From: Geosiphon pyriformis uo1
Taxonomy: Eukaryota; Fungi; Glomeromycota
Assembly (NCBI GenBank): GCA_016748015.1
Contig: JAAOMT010000290.1
Coordinates: forward strand, 2,927-12,732
Reading direction: 5' to 3'
Length of the DNA stretch: 9,806 nucleotides
Shown piece by piece: positions 1,982-9,806 of this stretch; positions within the stretch are counted from its first letter, which is position 1, and every line of letters begins with the position of its first letter. The notes beneath the pieces are model-generated. The model was not told the origin of the DNA. It made no database searches and saw nothing but the letters and a program-made list of their open reading frames with translations. The position numbers and the translations under genes were made by a program.

Positions 1982-3381
1982 TTAATTTGACGTGTTTGGT
2001 TCAATAATTATGATTGGTTCCAAATTTTATGGAATTTTATCTGGTTGGATTAGTATTCACTATACTCTCAGTTGTAAAATATTATTGGTAGATAATGATA
2101 CTGTATAATGATATGGTTTTAGTTGATTACCATATGCTGCTTTGACTAAGATTTTGTTGTCCCATCTTAATTTATAAGCTTTATTTTCTAGAATATTTTC
2201 TATGTGAAATGGTCTATTCTATTTGGAGTTGAATTTTCTACTCCATTGTTTTTCTACTTTGGTACAATATAAAAGTACTTTGTTTCCAATTTTGAATTCA
2301 ACTGGTTTATTTAATAGTTAGTTATTATGTCTTTCTTTTTGTTTTTTTTGTAATTTCTGGATGTTTTCAGCTGCTTTTTGCCATTTGTTTTCTAGTGTTT
2401 CTATTAGATCATATGTTTTTCTCAACAATGTTTTTTTTGAAAATTGTCTTCTGCTATTAGTTCAGTTGGATATGTGCTGACTTTTATTTTTACTAGTAAT
2501 ATTGCTGTTTTACTATATACTAATTCAAATGATGTTGCTTGTGTAGTGTCTTGCTTTATTGTCTAATAAGCAAATAATACTGATGGTATAAACAAATTCT
2601 ATTTGTCTTGATATTTTTGGCTGATTTTGGTAATTGCTTTACACAATGTTCTATTGAATCTTTCGACCAAGCCATTGGTTTGGAAATGATATAATAATAA
2701 TAATAGTCTTTTGATTCCAAATTTTTGACTTAATTCTGCTAATGTTCTATTTACAAAATAAGTTTCTTGGTCAGATAGTAATTTTTTTGGACATCCATGT
2801 TGACAAATCAAATCTTGATGAACGAATTTGACAACAAATTCTGCATCTGCTCTTTGAATGGCTTTTGCTTCTAGCCATTTTGTAAGATAGTTCATGGCTA
2901 CTGCAATGTATCTGTTACCTCTGCTAATAATTATTAGTGATCTGACTAAGTCAATTCCAATGTAATCAAATGGTTGTCTCACTTTAATTGTTTTTAATAG
3001 TTTACTGGGTCTTGTTTCTTCTCTTTTTTGACAAGCATCACAATTTTGAACATATTAAATAATATCTGAATACATAGATGACCAATAGTATTTTTTTCTG
3101 ATTTTTTTCATGGTTGCTTATTTGTTAAAATGTTCTGCTGTTGGATCAGAATGTATGTTGAATAATATTGTTTCTTTCTTTGGTTCTGTAATTACTTTGG
3201 TTGGTTGATTTAGATTTTTTTTGTTTTTCTGATAAAATATATCTTGATAAGTAATAAAATATTTGGATTGTTGTTTGATATGGCTTTGTTCTTTTGGAAA
3301 TAATTTCTCCTTGAACTGCTGAGTATTAATATAGTGTTGGAGTTGTTAATATTTTTGAGTTAAAATGTTTTTAGATTTGTC
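1982..3381 (-). pseudogene. Retrotransposon integrase (HHCC zinc finger, DDE core, GPY/F tail)
   Basis: HSDPTAEH (3153-3130) and CDAC (3042-3031) form the HHCC motif. ORF 2599-2982 is the catalytic core (IGIDLV, LLSDQETYF, QTNGLVERFNRTL). KFNSK*NRPF at about 2235-2207 is a decayed GPF module. Contains stops and a homopolymer frameshift near 2430. Confidence 0.95.
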
Positions 3382-3550
3382 TCATTCATGATAAGCCATT
3401 GGCATTTCTGTTTTTTTTTTCTTTTTTGTAATATACTGTATAATTAAATGGTAAAAGTTCTATTTTCTATCTAACATGACAATTATCTTCAAATTTTTGC
3501 TTTTGGATTAAAATTAATCTTTTATGATCAGTGTATATATCAAACTTTTG
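3371..3550 (-). pseudogene. RNase H, C-terminal half
   Basis: QKFDIYTDHKRL...R*KIELLPFNYTVYYKKEKKNRNANGLS* matches the Ty3/Gypsy RNase H motifs F-x-(I/V)-x-TDH (TDH at 3532-3524), RW and NxxAD(A/G)LSR. Confidence 0.9.
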
Positions 3551-4333
3551 ATTCAAGTATTCTTTCCATTTTATGACTGCTGTTACAAGAATGTTTTCTT
3601 GGTATATTTTAATTGTTAATTTTCTGTTTTAATTGCAATCAGTCTTTCGTGAATTTCTTGATTTTATGTGTTGAATATTAATAATAATGTACTGAAGATT
3701 TTCTCTTAATATTGTGATGTAAGTTTTCACTTTAATTCTAGTTGTCTTTATATGTTGTGTACTCCTTTCCAAAGGCTAATTTGAAATTTATCTACTGTTT
3801 GGGGTCTTCTCTAAGGCTATTCTTGCAATTGTCTAATGTGTTTTTCTAATCTAGAAATACAGAATGTTAATGGCTTTTTCGCGATTTCCCTAAGTATATA
3901 ATAAAGCTTTTTTTTCAATTTAATTAGTAACCACGGAAATAATTTTGATCAGAGATTATTTTTCCAAAGGGTTCAAAGATAAAATAATAGTTTTATTTAC
4001 TAAAGAAAGTATGTGAATTCTATTGTTAATCTCATAATTGTGATGTTCATTCAATTTATTATTATTTTTTTTAATTCTTTTTAAATAAGATTTTATTTAG
4101 ATATTTGTTGTTTCTAGTTGAAGCTTGTTTTTTCTTTATCATTAAAAACTATTGTATATATATATAATTATTGTTTTACAAAATAACGTTTTGTAATACT
4201 CTATTTCCATTATTATTTTTAAATAGTGCTTGTTGCTTTTGCACAATAGTGCTTGCTGTTATTTGTAAATCATTTCTTTTTATAAATTATTACTGTGCTA
4301 TTTTATGATTGGCTAATTTATATTATTTATAAT
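3551..4333 (-). other. Unidentified in-frame insert of about 261 codons inside RNase H
   Basis: 783 bp between ...AVLQFKNLIG (ends 4334) and QKFDIYTDH (starts 3550), both in the same frame. The translation has multiple stops and no motif I recognise. Confidence 0.7.
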
Positions 4334-4945
4334 TCCTATTAAATTCTTGAACTGTAACACTGCCTAATAGATTGCTAAGTGTTTTAGTGTTGGAGTTTTA
4401 TAGTTTTTTTCAGCTGAACTTAAGTTTCTGCTGGCATAAGCTACTGGATATTCTAGTCTATTCAGTCTTTTATGAANNNNNNNNNNNNNNNNNNNNAATC
4501 TCATAATTGTGATGTTCATTCAATTTATTATTATTTTTTTTAATTTTTTTTAAATAAGATTTTATTTAGATATTTGTTGCTTCTAGTTGAAGCTTGTTTT
4601 TTCTTTATCATTAAAAACTATTGTATATATATATAATTATTGTTTTACAAAATAACGTTTTGTAATACTCTATTTCCATTATTATTTTTAAATAGTGCTT
4701 GTTGCTTTTGCACAATAGTGCTTGCTGTTATTTGTAAATCATTTCTTTTTATAAATTATTACTGTGCTATTTTATGATTGGCTAATTTATATTATTTATA
4801 ATTCCTATTAAATTCTTGAACTGTAACACTGCCTAATAGATTGCTAAGTGTTTTAGTGTTGGAGTTTTATAGTTTTTTTCAGCTGAACTTAAGTTTCTGC
4901 TGGCATAAGCTACTGGATATTCTAGTTTATTCAGTCTTTTATGAA
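4028..4945. repeat. 449-bp direct duplication flanking a 20-N scaffold gap (probable unmerged contig overlap)
   Basis: 4028-4476 matches 4497-4945, with Ns at 4477-4496. I found three differences, all C/T (4077/4546, 4111/4580, 4458/4927). Confidence 0.93.
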
Positions 4946-4994
4946 ATAATACTATTTCTAATGCTTGACCCAACACATCAATTGTAATTATGAA
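4803..4994 (-). pseudogene. RNase H, N-terminal half (partly repeated at 4334-4476)
   Basis: FIITIDVLGQALEIVL...YPVAYASRNLSSAEKNYKTPTLKHLAIY*AVLQFK matches the TDAS..GLGAVL, PVAYASR.L..AE.NY and ELLAIVWAV motifs. Confidence 0.93.
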
Positions 4995-5963
4995 TGATTT
5001 ACTATAATCTGAATAGATTAGTACTAGAGCTTGAATAAGCTTTCTTCTTAATATATCAAAAGCTTCTTGCTGGTTTTCAGTCTATTTATATTTGGTGTTT
5101 TTTGTTTGGAACTAGTATAATGGCTGAGCCAGTTTGAAAAAGTCTTTAATAAAACATTGATAGTAATCTGCAAATCCCAAGAATGCTTATAATTCAGTTA
5201 AGTTGGTGAATACTGGAAAGTTTTTAACTATCTTGATTTTGTCTGGATCTGTTTTGATACCATCTTTGCTCATGACATGTCCCAAAAACTTGAGTTCAGT
5301 TTTTCTAAAGAAATATTTAGTTGCATTCAATTTTAATTTGAGTTGTCTTAATTTTTTAAATACTTGTTAGAGATGGTGTAAATAATCATCAAATGTTTTG
5401 GAGAACACATTGGTATCATTTAAGTATATGACTACTGATTTCTATAATATTTTAGTATAGACAATTTTTATAAGTCATTGAAATATTGCTGAAGCATTCA
5501 TTAAGCCAAAAGGCATAACTTCAAATTCGAATTTTTTTTTTTGGGTTGTAAAAGCTGTTTTCTCCTTATCTTCTAGTTTTATGGCTACTTTCCAGTAATT
5601 ACTGTCTAAGTCTAAAGTTGAAAACCATTTTTTTTCTCCAAAAGTGTCAAAAAGTTCTTGGATCTTTGGAATTGGGTAGCTATCTCTTTTTGTTACTCTA
5701 TTAAGTTTTTGATAATCTACACAGAAGTGGATTTTCCCATTTTTCTTACAGATTAGTATTATTGGTAATAATCATAGACTTATTAATGGTTAAATTAATC
5801 TATTGTTTAATATCCAGTTGATTTCTTGTTAGATAATTTTATGGCTTGCTGGCAGTACTTGGTATACTCTTTACTTAATTGATATTGCATTTCTAGCTTT
5901 GATTTAATATTAAATTATATCAGTTCTGCTAAATTGATTTTCACTAACAAAGATGTCATTGAA
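4995..5963 (-). pseudogene. Reverse transcriptase plus connection region
   Basis: KKNGKIHFCVDYQKLN (about 5750-5700), WFSTLDLDSNYW (about 5627-5592), VMPFGLMNASAIFQ* (MPFGL at 5516-5502), catalytic YLDD mutated to YLND (5426-5415), KFLGHV and EL*AFLGFADYY. Confidence 0.97.
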
Positions 5964-6158
5964 GTTGTTGAGTAATAATTTTAGCTGCATACATTATAAG
6001 AAGTCCAAATTTCTCAAGTTCATCTGTTTTAACTGTTCTGATTGGAACAGATAATATTCTTCTTGTCCATATATTGTTTGTGATGTGATATCCACATATT
6101 CACACAGTTGTGAAAAATCTGAAACAGAGTTTGGTGATTGCTTTTCAACTTCGATACT

Positions 6159-6400
6159 TAAATATCCAATAGTAGTTCTTTTTGATATCTTAAAAACATC
6201 TTTTGTTGTATTGTAGATAAGAATTTTAATATGTTTTAGGCTTTTATCTAGTATGTAAAAATTTGTGAGTCCAATTTTTCCTGATTCACTTATAGTATTT
6301 TCTGCTTCAAAAATTTAAGCTTGATCTTTTACTCCTCTTTTTATGGCTAATATATACTGGTTATATAGTGGAATAGAAATTGATTAACAGATGGAGATAA
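6159..6400 (-). pseudogene. Possible second, non-catalytic dUTPase-like domain
   Basis: In frame with pol. SISIPLY and HIKILIYNTTKDVFKISKRTTIGYL parallel TIKLKPH and NIIAMLQNNSEKAYIIEPNKKIS of the adjacent dUTPase, but no catalytic motifs are recognisable. Confidence 0.4.
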
Positions 6401-6455
6401 TTTTTTCTTTGTTAACAATTTTTTTTTCTGCCATATTAATTGATACATCTATTCT

Positions 6456-6872
6456 ATCTGTGAATCCTAATCTCTGTATTTTTCTAGCTGTAATCCCTAA
6501 TTCTTTTTTTCTCACTGACATTAATTGAACTATTTTAATTAGAGGCAGGAATATTGTCTATGATATTTTTTTATTTGGTTCTATGATATAGGCTTTTTCT
6601 GAATTATTCTGTAGCATTGCAATAATATTTCCTATATATTTTGCATCAATTATTCCTCCTCTGATGTTAATTTTTTTTTTTGCTAAGCTACTTCTGAATG
6701 CTAACTGAATTATTGTTGTTGCTAGAATTTTCAGTGCTATTTTTAGATTAATGCAGATGTATAAATGTGGTTTCAATTTGATGGTTTTTTTTTCTGGGTA
6801 TTTTAGATTAAACTCTAAATTAGTATCATGTGTGTATTCTAGCAAGATATCTTTATTATTATTGCTAAACAA
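6456..6872 (-). pseudogene. dut: Trimeric-type dUTPase domain of the polyprotein
   Basis: All five motifs in order, decayed: TNLEFNL (I, AGxDL), AFRSSLA (II), GGIIDAKYIGNI (III), KKIS* (IV, KIAQ with a probable CAG>TAG at 6560-6558) and RKIQRLGFTD at 6485-6456 (V, RGxxGFGSTG). Same frame as the RT. Confidence 0.92.
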
Positions 6873-7974
6873 CTTCAGTTCTTGCTTTTTGGTAAGATTA
6901 AGGAGTATAATATATTGTTTTATGTTTGAATTTGAGCTTAAATTGTTATTATTGTTATTATCAATTTAAACAAAACAGGAATTGTTATTATTATTGTCAT
7001 TATTGTCAGAGTTTGAATCAGGATTAAACATTGATTCTGATTCTGATGTGCAGTTGTTGATTGGTTCATGTTTTTCTAAAATTATGTAGATTATGCACAG
7101 TGATGGATTGTAAACAATGTTATAATCATCACAATATTCAAAGTCATTGGGAATTAGGCAATCTCTGTACAGTCTAATATTTAGTTGTTCTAACAGCTGT
7201 TTTTGCTTTTTTTGGGTAGGTGCTAAATTCTGGTAATGTTCATAAAACTCTTCTGGACTGGTTTCAATGTTGAAAAAAGTGTCTAGGTTAGGAATAAAGA
7301 AAGTTTTGACTAGTTCTGGTGGGTTATTTTTAATCTCCAATATTTTATTAGGCAAAATGCCTTTAACTTTAGAACTTGCCATTCTCCAAATTTTGTTTTC
7401 ATTATGTGGGTAGCCATCTAAACATGTCAAAGCACAGTTCTATGTAGTGTTAAAAGGTGTTTTATAACTAATCTAGTTGCTAATGAAGATTGTGTATTAA
7501 CACATTCTTCCTTAACCAGAAATGTTGTTCTATATTTTTTTGTTAAGTAACTGTTTCTCACAAGCAAGACATGGTTTGTTGTTCCAGTTGTCTTGTCATG
7601 TTGGGTAGTTATATCGTTTTTTGTGGTATGACTTGTAGTAATAGTAGATTTGCATTCAGTAATCTTTATTGAGTGCTATCCAAGCTCCTATAAAAGAAAG
7701 TTTTTTGCCACAATCTTAATATTTGAGGAGGATATATGGTAGTTCTTTAATAGATTTATGTAAGTATGATTTTTTTCAGCCATTTATTATCTCCTTAGTG
7801 GCTGTGGTTTCTTTGGGTTCGTTTTCTTCTTTTCCTTTTTTTTATCATTTCAAGTTAGAATTGGTGGTAGCTTATTATGATTATTGTTGGTCCAGAAAAT
7901 TTGGTAAGCTTTCCAGGTGGGGGGTTTTTTTTTTTTTGAATGTAATTAGTAGTAATACAATAGTTGGCTTGAAG
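6873..7974 (-). pseudogene. Protease-dUTPase spacer with Cys-rich motifs and an N/D/S low-complexity tract
   Basis: Includes ORF 6966-7430, which is in the pol frame. Motifs Y*DCGKKL, PCLACEKQL and YRDCLIPNDFEYCDDY. Ends in NPDSNSDNNDNNNNNS. Confidence 0.65.
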
Positions 7975-8340
7975 TGTTCACAAATTGCTGGTATTTATGT
8001 ATGATGACTGTTCTAACTAAGCTGGAGCTCTTGTATTGTCTAGTTAAGTACAGTGTTGGTTTTGATTAGCCAGTCATTACCAACAAAAGCTTGATACTGG
8101 ATGGTTTTTATTACTAAGACTTTAATTAGTACAGTAATACCATTAACTTCAATAGTAAAGTTATTGATTTCATCTATAGAAGTTTTGGTTACTCCATTAG
8201 CTGTAATGATTCTGGCACTGGTAATGTCACCAACTTGGCAATCTAATTGGTCCATGAGTTGTCATGTGATAATGCTGCCTACTAATTTGCTATTAAGAAT
8301 CAGTTTCTTTGACATTCATGTACATTACAGTAATGGGCTT
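7975..8340 (-). pseudogene. Retropepsin-type aspartic protease
   Basis: LILNSKLVGSII (NSK at 8294-8286 is a decayed DSG), flap-like IITANG and C-terminal AFVGNDWL (the ILGxDWL motif). Includes ORF 8040-8255. Confidence 0.88.
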
Positions 8341-9206
8341 TACATTAAAGATGGCTCTGCTAAAAAGGTATTTTGGTTGGTTTCTCAATCTCAAAAGAAA
8401 AAATTGCTGCTAACAACTTATTGTTGGTGAGTGGTTTCTTGTTTGTTTCTACATTGTTGAGCGAGATGTCTTCTGCGGTAACCAGAAAACTTAAATAATT
8501 TTGAAAATTCAAATTTTGGACATATCTAATATCCGAATTTCTTAAACATGATTCTAAGAATTATTGAGATGTGTTAGGGATTGGTTAATAAACAACCATT
8601 GCTGATTTTCAGTTTTGTTAAATAATTCTCAGCCTTTGATTTTCATTGGGCACAGTCATTTGTGGCAGTGTTTAAATGGCTTAAGATTGATAAATTAGTT
8701 ATAGTTGCAGTAGTTAATATATTATGGATGTTACTGATTAATAAATTGAAGGTAAGTATAATTGTTGTGTTATTGGTGCTTGATATATTGGCTAAGTCAC
8801 TTGAATATAATGTGGTAGATGTTGGTAATATTTTTGTGATTAATTACTAAAATAATTCTGAGTTTGGAGTTAGCAATCAGAGTTTTAATATTGAATATTC
8901 GATTATTGATTACTTAACTATTTATAATATTTAAATTACAGATATCCTTGTTTATTACAATAATAGTATACATGTGTTTCTTGTTGTCATTGTTGATTGG
9001 TAGAAAATAATAAACATGATTGATTTTGGAGATTATTAAAGTTTTCTTGATTATTTTGCCATTATAGGGTTTGATAGATGGTTTAATTGTTATTATTGTT
9101 AGTTAAGTATTTTTTTAATTTTTGGTTGATTGTGTTGTTGAATTGTTTTAGTTTAGAATTCAAGTCAGATGATCAGTTTATTACTAGATTTATGGTTTGG
9201 GCATGG
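8341..9206 (-). pseudogene. C-terminal part of gag with a decayed CCHC zinc knuckle, truncated by the telomere
   Basis: 8968-8927 reads Y-YY-C-NKQG-Y-L*FK-Y, the exact C-X2-C-X4-H-X4-C spacing if TAC/TAT derive from TGC, CAT and TGT by single transitions. It is preceded by a helical-looking segment (SSDLNSKLKQFNNTINQKLKKYL) and followed by N/S/T-rich sequence. Confidence 0.75.
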
Positions 9207-9806
9207 TTAGGGATAGGGATAGGGATAGGGATAGGGATAGGAATAGAGATAAGAATAGAGATAGGGATAGAGATAGAGATAGAGATAGAGATAGAGATAA
9301 GGATAGGGATAGGGTTTGGGTTTGGGTTAGGGTTAGGGTTAGGGTTAGGGTTAGGGTTAGGAATAGGGATAGGGATATTTATAGGGATATTTATAGGGAT
9401 ATTTATAGGGATATTTATAGGGATAGGGATATTTATAGGGATAGGGATATTTATAGGGATAGGGATAGGGATAGGGATAGGGATAGGGATATTTATAGGG
9501 ATAGGGATATTTATAGGGATAGGGATATTTATAGGGATAGGGATAGGGATAGGGATAGGGATATTTATAGGGATAGGGATAGGGATAGGGATAGGGTTAG
9601 GGTTAGGGTTAGGGTTAGGGTTAGGGTTAGGGTTAGGGTTAGGGTTAGGGTTAGGGTTAGGGTTAGGGTTAGGGTTAGGGTTAGGGATAGGGATAGGGAT
9701 AGGGATAGGGATAGGGATAGGGATAGGGATAGGGATAGGGATAGGGATAGGGTTAGGGTTAGGGATAGGGATAGGGTTAGGGTTAGGGATAGGGATAGGG
9801 ATAGGG
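9207..9806 (+). repeat. Telomeric array of 100 in-phase hexamers, G-rich strand running to the window end
   Basis: Hand count: 52 ATAGGG, 25 TTAGGG, 10 ATATTT, 2 TTTGGG, 1 TTAGGA and 10 G>A variants of ATAGGG. The orientation is that expected at a right chromosome end. Confidence 0.93.

What the first reader, a model, noticed from the sequence alone, without database searches (positions are those of the whole stretch)
9207..9806. Telomere built from two co-dominant repeats, ATAGGG and TTAGGG, in alternating blocks
Seen: ATAGGG (52 copies) outnumbers canonical TTAGGG (25). They alternate in clean blocks out to the distal end (15 TTAGGG at 9597-9686, 11 ATAGGG at 9687-9752, then 2/2/2/3) without losing the 6-bp phase. 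Known: variant repeats usually sit proximally, while the distal tract is homogeneous because telomerase copies one template. Inference: two telomerase RNA paralogues or alleles with different templates, possibly from different nuclei, may act on the same end. Each block would then record one processive extension. Recombination-based maintenance is an alternative.
Basis: partly seen in the sequence, partly recalled or inferred. Interest (0 to 1): 0.8.

Follow-up and report, generated by a model that had tools for sequence, protein, structure and literature searches.

The report
Mixed ATAGGG/TTAGGG telomere on healed end
The window ends in what looks like a real chromosome-end telomere of an early-diverging fungus (probably Geosiphon pyriformis), built from a few fixed repeat words rather than one; this suggests, but does not show, that its telomerase copies more than one template.

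Summary
Window 9207-9806 is 100 in-phase hexamers with no indel: ATAGGG 52, TTAGGG 25, ATATTT 10, ATAGAG 7.

The array sits at a contig end with the G-rich strand running 3' outward. It starts inside a truncated LTR retroelement at a TTAG microhomology, which is the mark of a healed chromosome break.

ATAGGG is genome-wide. About 40 contig ends carry it in the correct orientation. In 23 parsed arrays the tally is ATAGGG 807, TTAGGG 610 and ATATTT 158, and all 158 ATATTT units are followed by an ATAGGG-type unit.

The usual order runs from decayed units, through an ATATTT/ATAGGG zone and an ATAGGG run, to a distal TTAGGG run. This window is atypical: 15 TTAGGG are followed by 11 ATAGGG and a fine mix at the tip, on a contig of only 12.7 kb.

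The restricted vocabulary, the healed ends that begin with ATAGGG and the lack of shared patterns between ends favour templated synthesis from more than one template read-out. Two telomerase RNAs remain unshown, because I identified no telomerase RNA. Read-level confirmation failed because the reads tool skipped the repeat.

Earlier agents of this scan reported the same composite telomere on other pieces of this genome.

The parts
2599..9206 (-). Decayed LTR retroelement, with its pol reading frame on the minus strand, that forms the subtelomere. Its 5' (gag-side) part is cut off at 9206.
   Evidence: Integrase core domain (rve) at 2599-2979(-) and dUTPase at 6558-6869(-). Window 8300-9206 matches a dispersed family at 68-79% identity with 1479 first-look candidates.
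9199..9212 (+). Junction between the truncated element and the telomere. The TTAG at 9207-9210 is shared by the element and the first telomere unit, which is a healing-type microhomology.
   Evidence: In all 23 internal copies inspected, the element runs on past this point as TTAGCTT.. or TTGGCTT.. (TTGACTT.. in one). In the window it runs into TTAGGGATAGGG.
9207..9302 (+). Proximal zone: TTAGGG x1, ATAGGG x4, then G>A-decayed ATAGGG units (ATAGGA, ATAGAG x7, ATAAGA, ATAAGG).
   Evidence: There are 11 G>A changes between 9237 and 9302 and almost none further out.
9303..9362 (+). ATAGGG x2, TTTGGG x2, TTAGGG x5, TTAGGA x1: a first inner TTAGGG block.
9363..9596 (+). ATATTT/ATAGGG zone: 10 ATATTT units, each followed by 1 to 6 ATAGGG units. 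There is no TTAGGG here.
   Evidence: ATAGGG counts between ATATTT units: 1,1,1,2,2,6,2,2,5,5.
9597..9686 (+). TTAGGG x15 block.
9687..9752 (+). ATAGGG x11 block lying distal to the TTAGGG block. This is the atypical feature of this end.
   Evidence: It is the largest TTAGGG-run to ATAGGG-run return among 23 arrays.
9753..9806 (+). Fine mix of TTAGGG x2, ATAGGG x2, TTAGGG x2, ATAGGG x3, ending exactly at the contig end.

Best explanation
Window 9207-9806 is a genuine chromosome-end telomere of a Glomeromycotina fungus, probably Geosiphon pyriformis. It was seeded de novo on a chromosome break inside an LTR retroelement. In this genome telomeres are written in three discrete words: TTAGGG, ATAGGG and the 12-mer ATATTT-ATAGGG. 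I think the most likely mechanism is that telomerase synthesises all three from more than one template read-out. That could be two or three telomerase RNA genes or alleles, or one RNA with a long template holding several alignment registers. The active read-out would persist over many successive additions and switch only slowly, which writes zones and blocks. The 12-mer rule follows naturally from this. ATATTT has no GGG with which to re-pair on the template, so synthesis must run on to the next GGG. At most ends the current outermost layer is TTAGGG. At this end an ATAGGG phase follows a TTAGGG phase. Shown: terminal position and orientation, genome-wide use of the same words, the strict grammar, the healing junction and individually different patterns at each end. 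Inferred: that telomerase rather than recombination writes ATAGGG and ATATTT, and that more than one template exists.
For: (1) The array is terminal and G-strand-out, and (ATAGGG)4 occurs 254 times forward and 308 times reverse in the genome. The listed places lie at contig ends in the correct orientation on about 40 contigs.

(2) The vocabulary is discrete. In 23 arrays the tally is ATAGGG 807, TTAGGG 610 and ATATTT 158. Single odd units inside ATAGGG runs are ATATTT 38, TTAGGG 18 and all other variants 3. Inside TTAGGG runs they are ATAGGG 11 and others 3. Random mutation would spread over 18 possible single substitutions per unit.

(3) ATATTT is followed by ATAGGG, or by a G>A-decayed ATAGGG, in 158 of 158 cases. 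It is never followed by TTAGGG or another ATATTT.

(4) Ends where the array abuts unique sequence start with ATAGGG or ATATTT units right at a short G-rich microhomology. Examples are this window, C44, C336, C530, C565 and C499. This fits de novo addition by an enzyme that makes those words.

(5) No two ends share a complex unit pattern longer than a shuffled null gives: observed maximum 10 transitions, null 7 to 12. The arrays are therefore not copies of one another.

(6) Kilobase-scale decayed subtelomeric arrays are built on ATA[AG]3 (595) and not TTA[AG]3 (108). ATAGGG is therefore old and real in this lineage.

(7) A TERT-type gene is present. Two loci carry the Telomerase_RBD T-motif above the Pfam cut-off.

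(8) There is precedent. Two telomerase RNA paralogues with different templates give interspersed two-repeat telomeres in Mimulus lewisii (PMC12169523), and multiple copies with different templates are reported in Andrena bees (10.1101/2025.04.29.651168).
Against: No telomerase RNA was found, so the number and sequence of templates is unknown. The isolated template-like hits were histone TATA boxes or occurred at chance level, and Rfam Telomerase_Asco gave nothing. There is no read-level confirmation, because read laying skipped 9194-9596 as repeats and all three runs come from one sample and study. Most ends finish in pure TTAGGG. That also fits a telomerase that makes only TTAGGG, with the variants maintained by DNA-level processes. 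Run lengths are over-dispersed, with 41-51% singletons plus runs of 10 or more, so a simple two-enzyme competition with constant parameters does not fit. The window's contig is only 12.7 kb, and short contigs have less TTAGGG at their tips (Mann-Whitney p about 0.05). The distal order here may therefore rest on few reads or on a truncated array.
Confidence: 0.5

Rival explanations
1. Telomerase makes only TTAGGG. ATAGGG and ATATTT-ATAGGG are proximal variant repeats, like the variant-repeat region at the base of human telomeres. They persist and expand by replication slippage, unequal sister exchange or break-induced copying. The distal ATAGGG block of this window would then be a recombination product or an assembly truncation.
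For: The last ten units are at least 70% TTAGGG at 13 of 23 ends. Mean relative positions run decayed 0.20 < ATATTT 0.35 < ATAGGG 0.45 < TTAGGG 0.67. The relative R. irregularis has plain TTAGGG (PMC10234402). Over-dispersed run lengths and repeated zone cycles (ATATTT/ATAGGG, then ATAGGG, then TTAGGG, more than once) in C279, C686, C778, C384 and this window look like DNA-level amplification. Tips on short contigs are poorer in TTAGGG.
Against: Healed ends that abut unique sequence begin with ATAGGG or ATATTT units at only 2-4 nt of microhomology. Homology-driven copying would need more than that. Only two variant words occur, with almost no other single-base variants in the clean zones. No complex patterns are shared between ends beyond the null, and repeated zones within one array are not identical. 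ATAGGG outnumbers TTAGGG overall. ATAGGG runs follow TTAGGG runs of 5 or more at six or more ends.
Confidence: 0.3
2. This is a sequencing or assembly artefact. True TTAGGG arrays were miscalled in blocks as ATAGGG or ATATTT by a long-read basecaller or by polishing.
For: Block-wise, strand-specific miscalling of telomere repeats is documented for nanopore data (PMC9414165). I could not see any read over the array, and I could not establish which platform the assembly came from.
Against: The documented nanopore errors are TTAAAA, CTTCTT and CCCTGG, not ATAGGG. The arrays keep perfect hexamer phase with 0% indels. The same words and grammar occur at left ends and right ends of contigs. Kilobase-long decayed subtelomeric arrays are ATA-based, with ordinary G>A point decay that no basecaller error would create. 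The ATATTT-then-ATAGGG rule held in 158 of 158 cases.
Confidence: 0.08
3. There is a single telomerase RNA with one canonical template, and the variants come from enzyme infidelity. One example would be a one-base read-through of the template boundary that puts A in place of the first T.
For: Single-template heterogeneity is well known from my own background knowledge (Paramecium TTGGGG/TTTGGG, Plasmodium GGGTT[T/C]A, the irregular repeats of budding yeast). About half of the ATAGGG and TTAGGG runs are singletons, as independent per-cycle errors would give.
Against: Independent errors cannot give ATAGGG runs of up to 33 units and TTAGGG runs of up to 56. They also cannot give the triple change GGG>TTT in ATATTT with its strict successor rule.
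Confidence: 0.1

Closest known systems
Mimulus lewisii heterogeneous telomere made from two telomerase RNA paralogues (PMC12169523)
   Same: Two closely related repeat words are interspersed at chromosome ends across the whole genome. A relative uses a single word. The proposed cause is more than one telomerase template.
   Different: In Mimulus the two RNAs were found, shown to be expressed and shown by TRAP and TRF to be used. Here no telomerase RNA is known. The fungus has a third word, a 12-mer with a successor rule. It also has large-scale zoning from inner ATAGGG to outer TTAGGG, with occasional returns, rather than even interspersion. I found no fungal case in the literature searched.
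Andrena bees with multiple telomerase RNA gene copies carrying different templates (bioRxiv 10.1101/2025.04.29.651168)
   Same: Several telomeric words in one genome are linked to template diversity, with no corresponding evolutionary change in TERT, which is a single-copy gene there.
   Different: The bees are animals and their RNA genes were identified. Here there are two TERT-like loci, one apparently broken, and no RNA gene is known.
Variant-repeat region at the base of human telomeres, and repeat variants in ALT cells (PMC3919612 lists ATAGGG among human variants)
   Same: Variant hexamers, including ATAGGG, lie proximal to a homogeneous distal TTAGGG tract at most ends.
   Different: Here the variant is the majority unit (807 against 610). 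Only two variant words occur. They start directly at healed junctions and can lie distal to long TTAGGG runs.
De novo telomere addition (chromosome healing) at breaks with short G/T-rich microhomology
   Same: The array begins inside a truncated retroelement at TTAG, with no subtelomeric repeat or fossil array.
   Different: The first units added are ATAGGG, not the canonical word.

Membership tests
Telomerase-type terminal telomere | Short G-rich tandem repeat at the physical end of the sequence, with the G strand running 3' outward | tested here: met
   The array reaches the last base of contig C372. Left-end arrays read as CCCTAW and right-end arrays as WTAGGG.
Telomerase-type terminal telomere | The same repeat at many independent chromosome ends | tested here: met
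   About 40 contig ends carry it; 23 arrays were parsed.
Telomerase-type terminal telomere | A telomerase reverse transcriptase gene is present | tested here: met
   Two loci match PF12009 Telomerase_RBD above the cut-off. I did not establish that either whole gene is intact.
Telomerase-type terminal telomere | True DNA end (Bal31 sensitivity, 3' overhang) | not testable with these tools
   Needs wet-lab work.
Multi-template telomerase system (Mimulus lewisii type) | Two or more repeat words interspersed at chromosome ends genome-wide | tested here: met
Multi-template telomerase system (Mimulus lewisii type) | Two or more telomerase RNA genes or alleles with different templates | tested here: inconclusive
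   Pattern searches for isolated template-like words gave only histone TATA boxes or chance-level hits. Rfam RF02462 gave nothing, under a stricter first look.
Multi-template telomerase system (Mimulus lewisii type) | Both templates are expressed and used by the enzyme (RNA-seq, TRAP) | not tested
TRAP is wet-lab work.
Recombination-maintained (ALT-like, roll-and-spread) telomere | Complex repeat patterns shared between different ends or repeated exactly within an end | tested here: not met
   The longest shared complex pattern between ends is no longer than in shuffled arrays. Repeated zones within arrays are not identical.
Recombination-maintained (ALT-like, roll-and-spread) telomere | Absence of telomerase | tested here: not met
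   TERT-like loci are present.
Interstitial telomeric sequence | Unique sequence continues beyond the array | tested here: not met
   The contig ends with the array. The true DNA end beyond the assembly is unknown.
Nanopore repeat-calling artefact | Known error words (TTAAAA, CTTCTT, CCCTGG) occurring in blocks | tested here: not met
   None of these words occurs in the array. The error list is from PMC9414165. The sequencing platform is unknown to me.

The most novel reading that the evidence does not exclude
This fungus runs a telomerase system with two or three alternative templates, giving ATATTT-ATAGGG, ATAGGG and TTAGGG. Their use switches slowly and reversibly, for example with life stage or with the ratio of genetically different nuclei in the shared cytoplasm. 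Each telomere would then be a layered time record of which template was active, and this window would record a switch back from TTAGGG to ATAGGG.
Probability: 0.25. Interest if true: 0.85.

Novelty: new variant of a known kind. Interest (0 to 1): 0.62.

Why it matters
Telomere sequence is normally fixed by one telomerase RNA template. Mixed telomeres made from several templates have so far been shown only in a plant and proposed in bees. If this holds, a fungal case with three discrete words, a strict grammar and a layered, sometimes reversing order would do three things. It would extend the phenomenon to fungi. It would offer a natural record of template use over time. It would give a sharp handle for finding the still unknown telomerase RNA of Glomeromycotina, because its template must contain CCCUAU, with or without CCCUAUAAAUAU. 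There is also a practical point. Telomere finders that look only for TTAGGG will under-call chromosome ends in this lineage.

Tried and rejected
**Read-level check.** The one run search found three runs of one sample and one study, all kept as Logan contigs. Read laying on 8600-9596 skipped 9194-9596 as repeats. It covered the flank only with short pieces from related element copies, so it says nothing for or against the array. I still kept pure TTAGGG patterns out of later searches.

**Telomerase RNA.**
- The pattern VNNCCCTATAAATATCCC gave four hits. All are paralogous promoters with a TATA box upstream of an ATG-TCG-GGA-AAA-GG start (probably histone genes), so I rejected them.
- VNNCCCTAWCCCTAW gave 36 hits against 129 for the reversed control, which is chance level.
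- Rfam Telomerase_Asco gave no hit, and the tool warned that it had used a stricter first look.

**Independent occurrence.** They are short microsatellites or GC-rich arrays of other organisms, and none has the ATATTT word. The tool also says that records of this genome may be left out.

**Other checks that led nowhere.**
- The look-up of encoding contigs for the ORF nearest the telomere found nothing on record.
- The right-end arrays of 18 further contigs could not be fetched.
- A higher-order periodicity test in the ATATTT/ATAGGG zones was not significant (28 of 74 adjacent equal spacings against 24.3 expected, p about 0.16).
- The subtelomere is not a shared family specific to chromosome ends. 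Its relatives lie at internal positions of long contigs.
- I could not read the Geosiphon genome paper to learn the sequencing platform.

Full report
**1. The observation**

Window 9207-9806 is a perfect-phase hexamer array. Read in phase from 9201 it contains ATAGGG 52, TTAGGG 25, ATATTT 10, ATAGAG 7, TTTGGG 2 and single copies of ATAGGA, ATAAGA, ATAAGG and TTAGGA. Tandem Repeats Finder calls one period-6 array at 9208-9806 with 99.8 copies, 0% indels and score 701.

Ten ATATTT units lie in 9375-9566, each followed by ATAGGG. A proximal stretch at 9237-9302 has 11 G>A changes in about 11 units, after which the array is almost free of such changes.

**2. Position and organism**

The window is G000:C372:2927-12732, so the array ends the contig with the G-rich strand running 3' outward. 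The genome has 128.3 Mb in 792 contigs, and the window is about 25% G+C. Published figures for Geosiphon pyriformis are 129 Mb, 795 scaffolds and 29% G+C (PMC9453076). Earlier scan notes name the same species. I treat that identity as probable and did not prove it. The relative Rhizophagus irregularis has plain TTAGGG telomeres (PMC10234402).

**3. The junction looks like a healed break**

The subtelomere is a decayed LTR retroelement on the minus strand, with integrase at 2599-2979 and dUTPase at 6558-6869. Window 8300-9206 belongs to a dispersed family at 68-79% identity with 1479 first-look candidates, mostly at internal positions of large contigs. In all 23 internal copies inspected, the element continues past the point that corresponds to 9206 as TTAGCTT.. 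or TTGGCTT.. (TTGACTT.. in one). In the window it turns into TTAGGG-ATAGGG-ATAGGG.

The telomere therefore starts inside a truncated element at a microhomology of up to four bases, TTAG, with no fossil array. This is the signature of de novo telomere addition. The units added first are ATAGGG.

**4. The genome-wide picture**

(ATAGGG)4 occurs 254 times forward and 308 times reverse. The tool's reversed-pattern control means nothing here, because the reversed unit is a rotation of the same repeat. The listed places lie at contig starts on the minus strand and at contig ends on the plus strand. Together they name about 40 telomere-bearing contig ends.

I parsed 23 arrays: 19 of the 20 left ends fetched (one did not parse in a single phase), three right ends and the window. 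The totals and transitions are:

| Unit | Count |
|---|---|
| ATAGGG | 807 |
| TTAGGG | 610 |
| ATATTT | 158 |
| ATAGAG | 41 |
| other | 114 |

- The "other" units are mostly G>A-decayed ATAGGG and lie proximally.
- ATATTT is followed by ATAGGG in 142 cases and by a decayed ATAGGG in 16. It is never followed by TTAGGG or another ATATTT.
- Mean relative positions, from proximal (0) to distal (1), are decayed 0.20, ATATTT 0.35, ATAGGG 0.45 and TTAGGG 0.67.
- The last ten units are at least 70% TTAGGG at 13 of 23 ends.

The common layout therefore runs from inside to outside as follows:
- a decayed zone;
- an ATATTT/ATAGGG zone;
- an ATAGGG run;
- a short ATAGGG/TTAGGG mix;
- a TTAGGG run.

This layout does not hold everywhere. 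The zone sequence recurs within single arrays (C279, C686, C778, C384 and this window). ATAGGG follows TTAGGG runs of five or more units at six or more ends. The 15-to-11 return in this window is the largest of these. The window's contig is short (12.7 kb), and tips on short contigs are poorer in TTAGGG than tips on long contigs (Mann-Whitney p about 0.05). The distal order seen here may therefore rest on few reads, or the array may be truncated.

**5. Real or artefact**

I could not get read-level evidence. The run search found three runs from one sample and one study, all kept as Logan contigs. Read laying skipped 9194-9596 as repeats. The internal evidence nevertheless favours a real sequence:
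- The phase is perfect, with 0% indels.
- The words and grammar are the same at left and right contig ends.
- The documented nanopore telomere miscalls are TTAAAA, CTTCTT and CCCTGG, not ATAGGG (PMC9414165).
- Several subtelomeres carry long arrays, up to about a kilobase, of decayed hexamers built on ATA[AG]3 (595 in the 900 nt next to the arrays) rather than TTA[AG]3 (108). A basecaller error would not produce such ordinary point decay on an ATA frame.

I put the artefact reading at about 8%.

**6. Mechanism**

Three results argue that ATAGGG and ATATTT-ATAGGG are templated words rather than mutated TTAGGG units.
- Single odd units inside ATAGGG runs are ATATTT (38) or TTAGGG (18), with only 3 of any other kind. 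Inside TTAGGG runs they are ATAGGG (11), with 3 others. Each unit has 18 possible single substitutions, and the proximal decay is G>A, so mutation would give a different spectrum.
- Ends that abut unique sequence begin with ATAGGG or ATATTT units right after a short G-rich microhomology.
- No two ends share a complex pattern beyond what shuffled arrays give, and repeated zones within one array are not identical. Wholesale copying between or within ends is therefore not evident.

The successor rule has a simple mechanical reading, which is my inference. ATATTT ends without GGG and cannot re-pair at a CCC alignment site, so the 12-mer is made in one pass.

A single template with two repeats in tandem fits poorly. 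It would make strict alternation the default, yet TTAGGG-to-TTAGGG (478) and ATAGGG-to-ATAGGG (503) steps far outnumber TTAGGG-to-ATAGGG (97) and ATAGGG-to-TTAGGG (112) steps. Independent misincorporation cannot give runs of 33 or 56 identical units.

Run lengths are over-dispersed: 41-51% are singletons, and there is an excess of runs of ten or more. A constant two-enzyme competition does not fit either. The active read-out appears to persist and to change slowly.

This is compatible with several telomerase RNAs whose relative activity drifts. It is also compatible with one long multi-register template used in different modes. I cannot separate these two.

The main rival is a telomerase that makes only TTAGGG, with variant words kept by DNA-level processes. 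It explains the TTAGGG tips at most ends and the zone cycles. It struggles with the healed junctions, the two-word vocabulary and the lack of shared patterns. I give it 0.3.

**7. Telomerase components**

Two TERT-like loci carry the RBD T-motif above the Pfam cut-off: C608:679534-679656 and C572:755736-755834. They are 71-81% identical at the DNA level with many gaps, and the C608 copy has shorter open frames. This agrees with an earlier scan note of one intact and one broken copy.

I identified no telomerase RNA. I could not examine it.

**8. Comparison with what is known**

I found no paper that describes ATAGGG as a fungal telomere word, or that describes Geosiphon telomeres at all. The closest validated system is Mimulus lewisii, where two telomerase RNA paralogues with different templates are both used and the two repeats are interspersed (PMC12169523). 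Andrena bees are a second proposed case.

The fungal arrays share the genome-wide two-word telomere with those cases. They differ in having a third word with a 12-base unit and in their large-scale zoning with occasional reversal. The defining feature of that family, namely the RNAs themselves, has not been tested here. I therefore file this as working like that system, with membership open.

**9. Verdict**

- The telomere reading is supported.
- 'Two co-dominant repeats out to the tip' is true for this end but is not the rule in the genome.
- 'Two telomerase RNAs' is plausible but unshown.
- 'One block per processive extension' is not supportable from an assembly.

Other agents of this scan already reported the composite telomere on other pieces of this genome. 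What this window adds is the healed-break junction with ATAGGG as the first synthesised word, and the clearest case of a return from a long TTAGGG run to a long ATAGGG run.

Noticed in passing
L061 (G000:C608:678034-681156) and L062 (G000:C572:754236-757334): Two TERT-like loci each carry the Telomerase_RBD T-motif. They are 71-81% identical in DNA with many gaps. The C608 copy has shorter open frames and looks broken.
   Followed up: partly
window 2599-2979(-), 6558-6869(-), 4028-4946: The whole subtelomere is a decayed LTR retroelement, with an integrase core and a dUTPase on the minus strand. It contains a 469-bp tandem duplication (2.0 copies, 95% matches).
   Followed up: partly
L075 (C549), L078 (C646), L081 (C732), L066 (C44), L079 (C669): Long subtelomeric arrays, up to about a kilobase, of G>A-decayed ATAGGG-derived hexamers (ATAAAG, ATAAGA, ATAGGA, ATAAAA) lie proximal to the clean telomere at some ends. 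Other ends, including this window, have none.
   Followed up: partly
L075 (C549), L078 (C646), L066 (C44): Complete telomere-like arrays that end in TTAGGG runs are followed by runs of N and then more sequence, and finally a second terminal array in the same orientation. These are either scaffold joins of two ends, withheld stretches or real internal telomeres.
   Followed up: no
L083-L086 (C64:4282, C572:1093514, C783:485140, C783:494958): Four paralogous promoters carry CCCTATAAATATCCC (a TATA box) about 60 nt upstream of an ATG-TCG-GGA-AAA-GG start, probably histone genes. They mimic a template for the 12-mer telomere word but are unrelated to it.
   Followed up: yes
G000:C731:46667-46750(-) and C731:37271; C609:152590-152808: ATAGGG/TTAGGG arrays, or short doublets, lie at apparently internal positions or in the 'wrong' orientation.
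   Followed up: no
L087-L205 (metagenome contigs): Many GC-rich environmental contigs hold short (ATAGGG)n tracts mixed with CTAGGG, GTAGGGG or TCAGGG-type arrays, some at contig ends. These are variable telomere-like arrays of unrelated eukaryotes.
   Followed up: partly
window 8828-9193 versus run X1: Logan contigs of X1 lie on the flank only as short, very deep pieces (depth in the hundreds to thousands) with several differences. That is, they come from other copies of the retroelement family.
   Followed up: no
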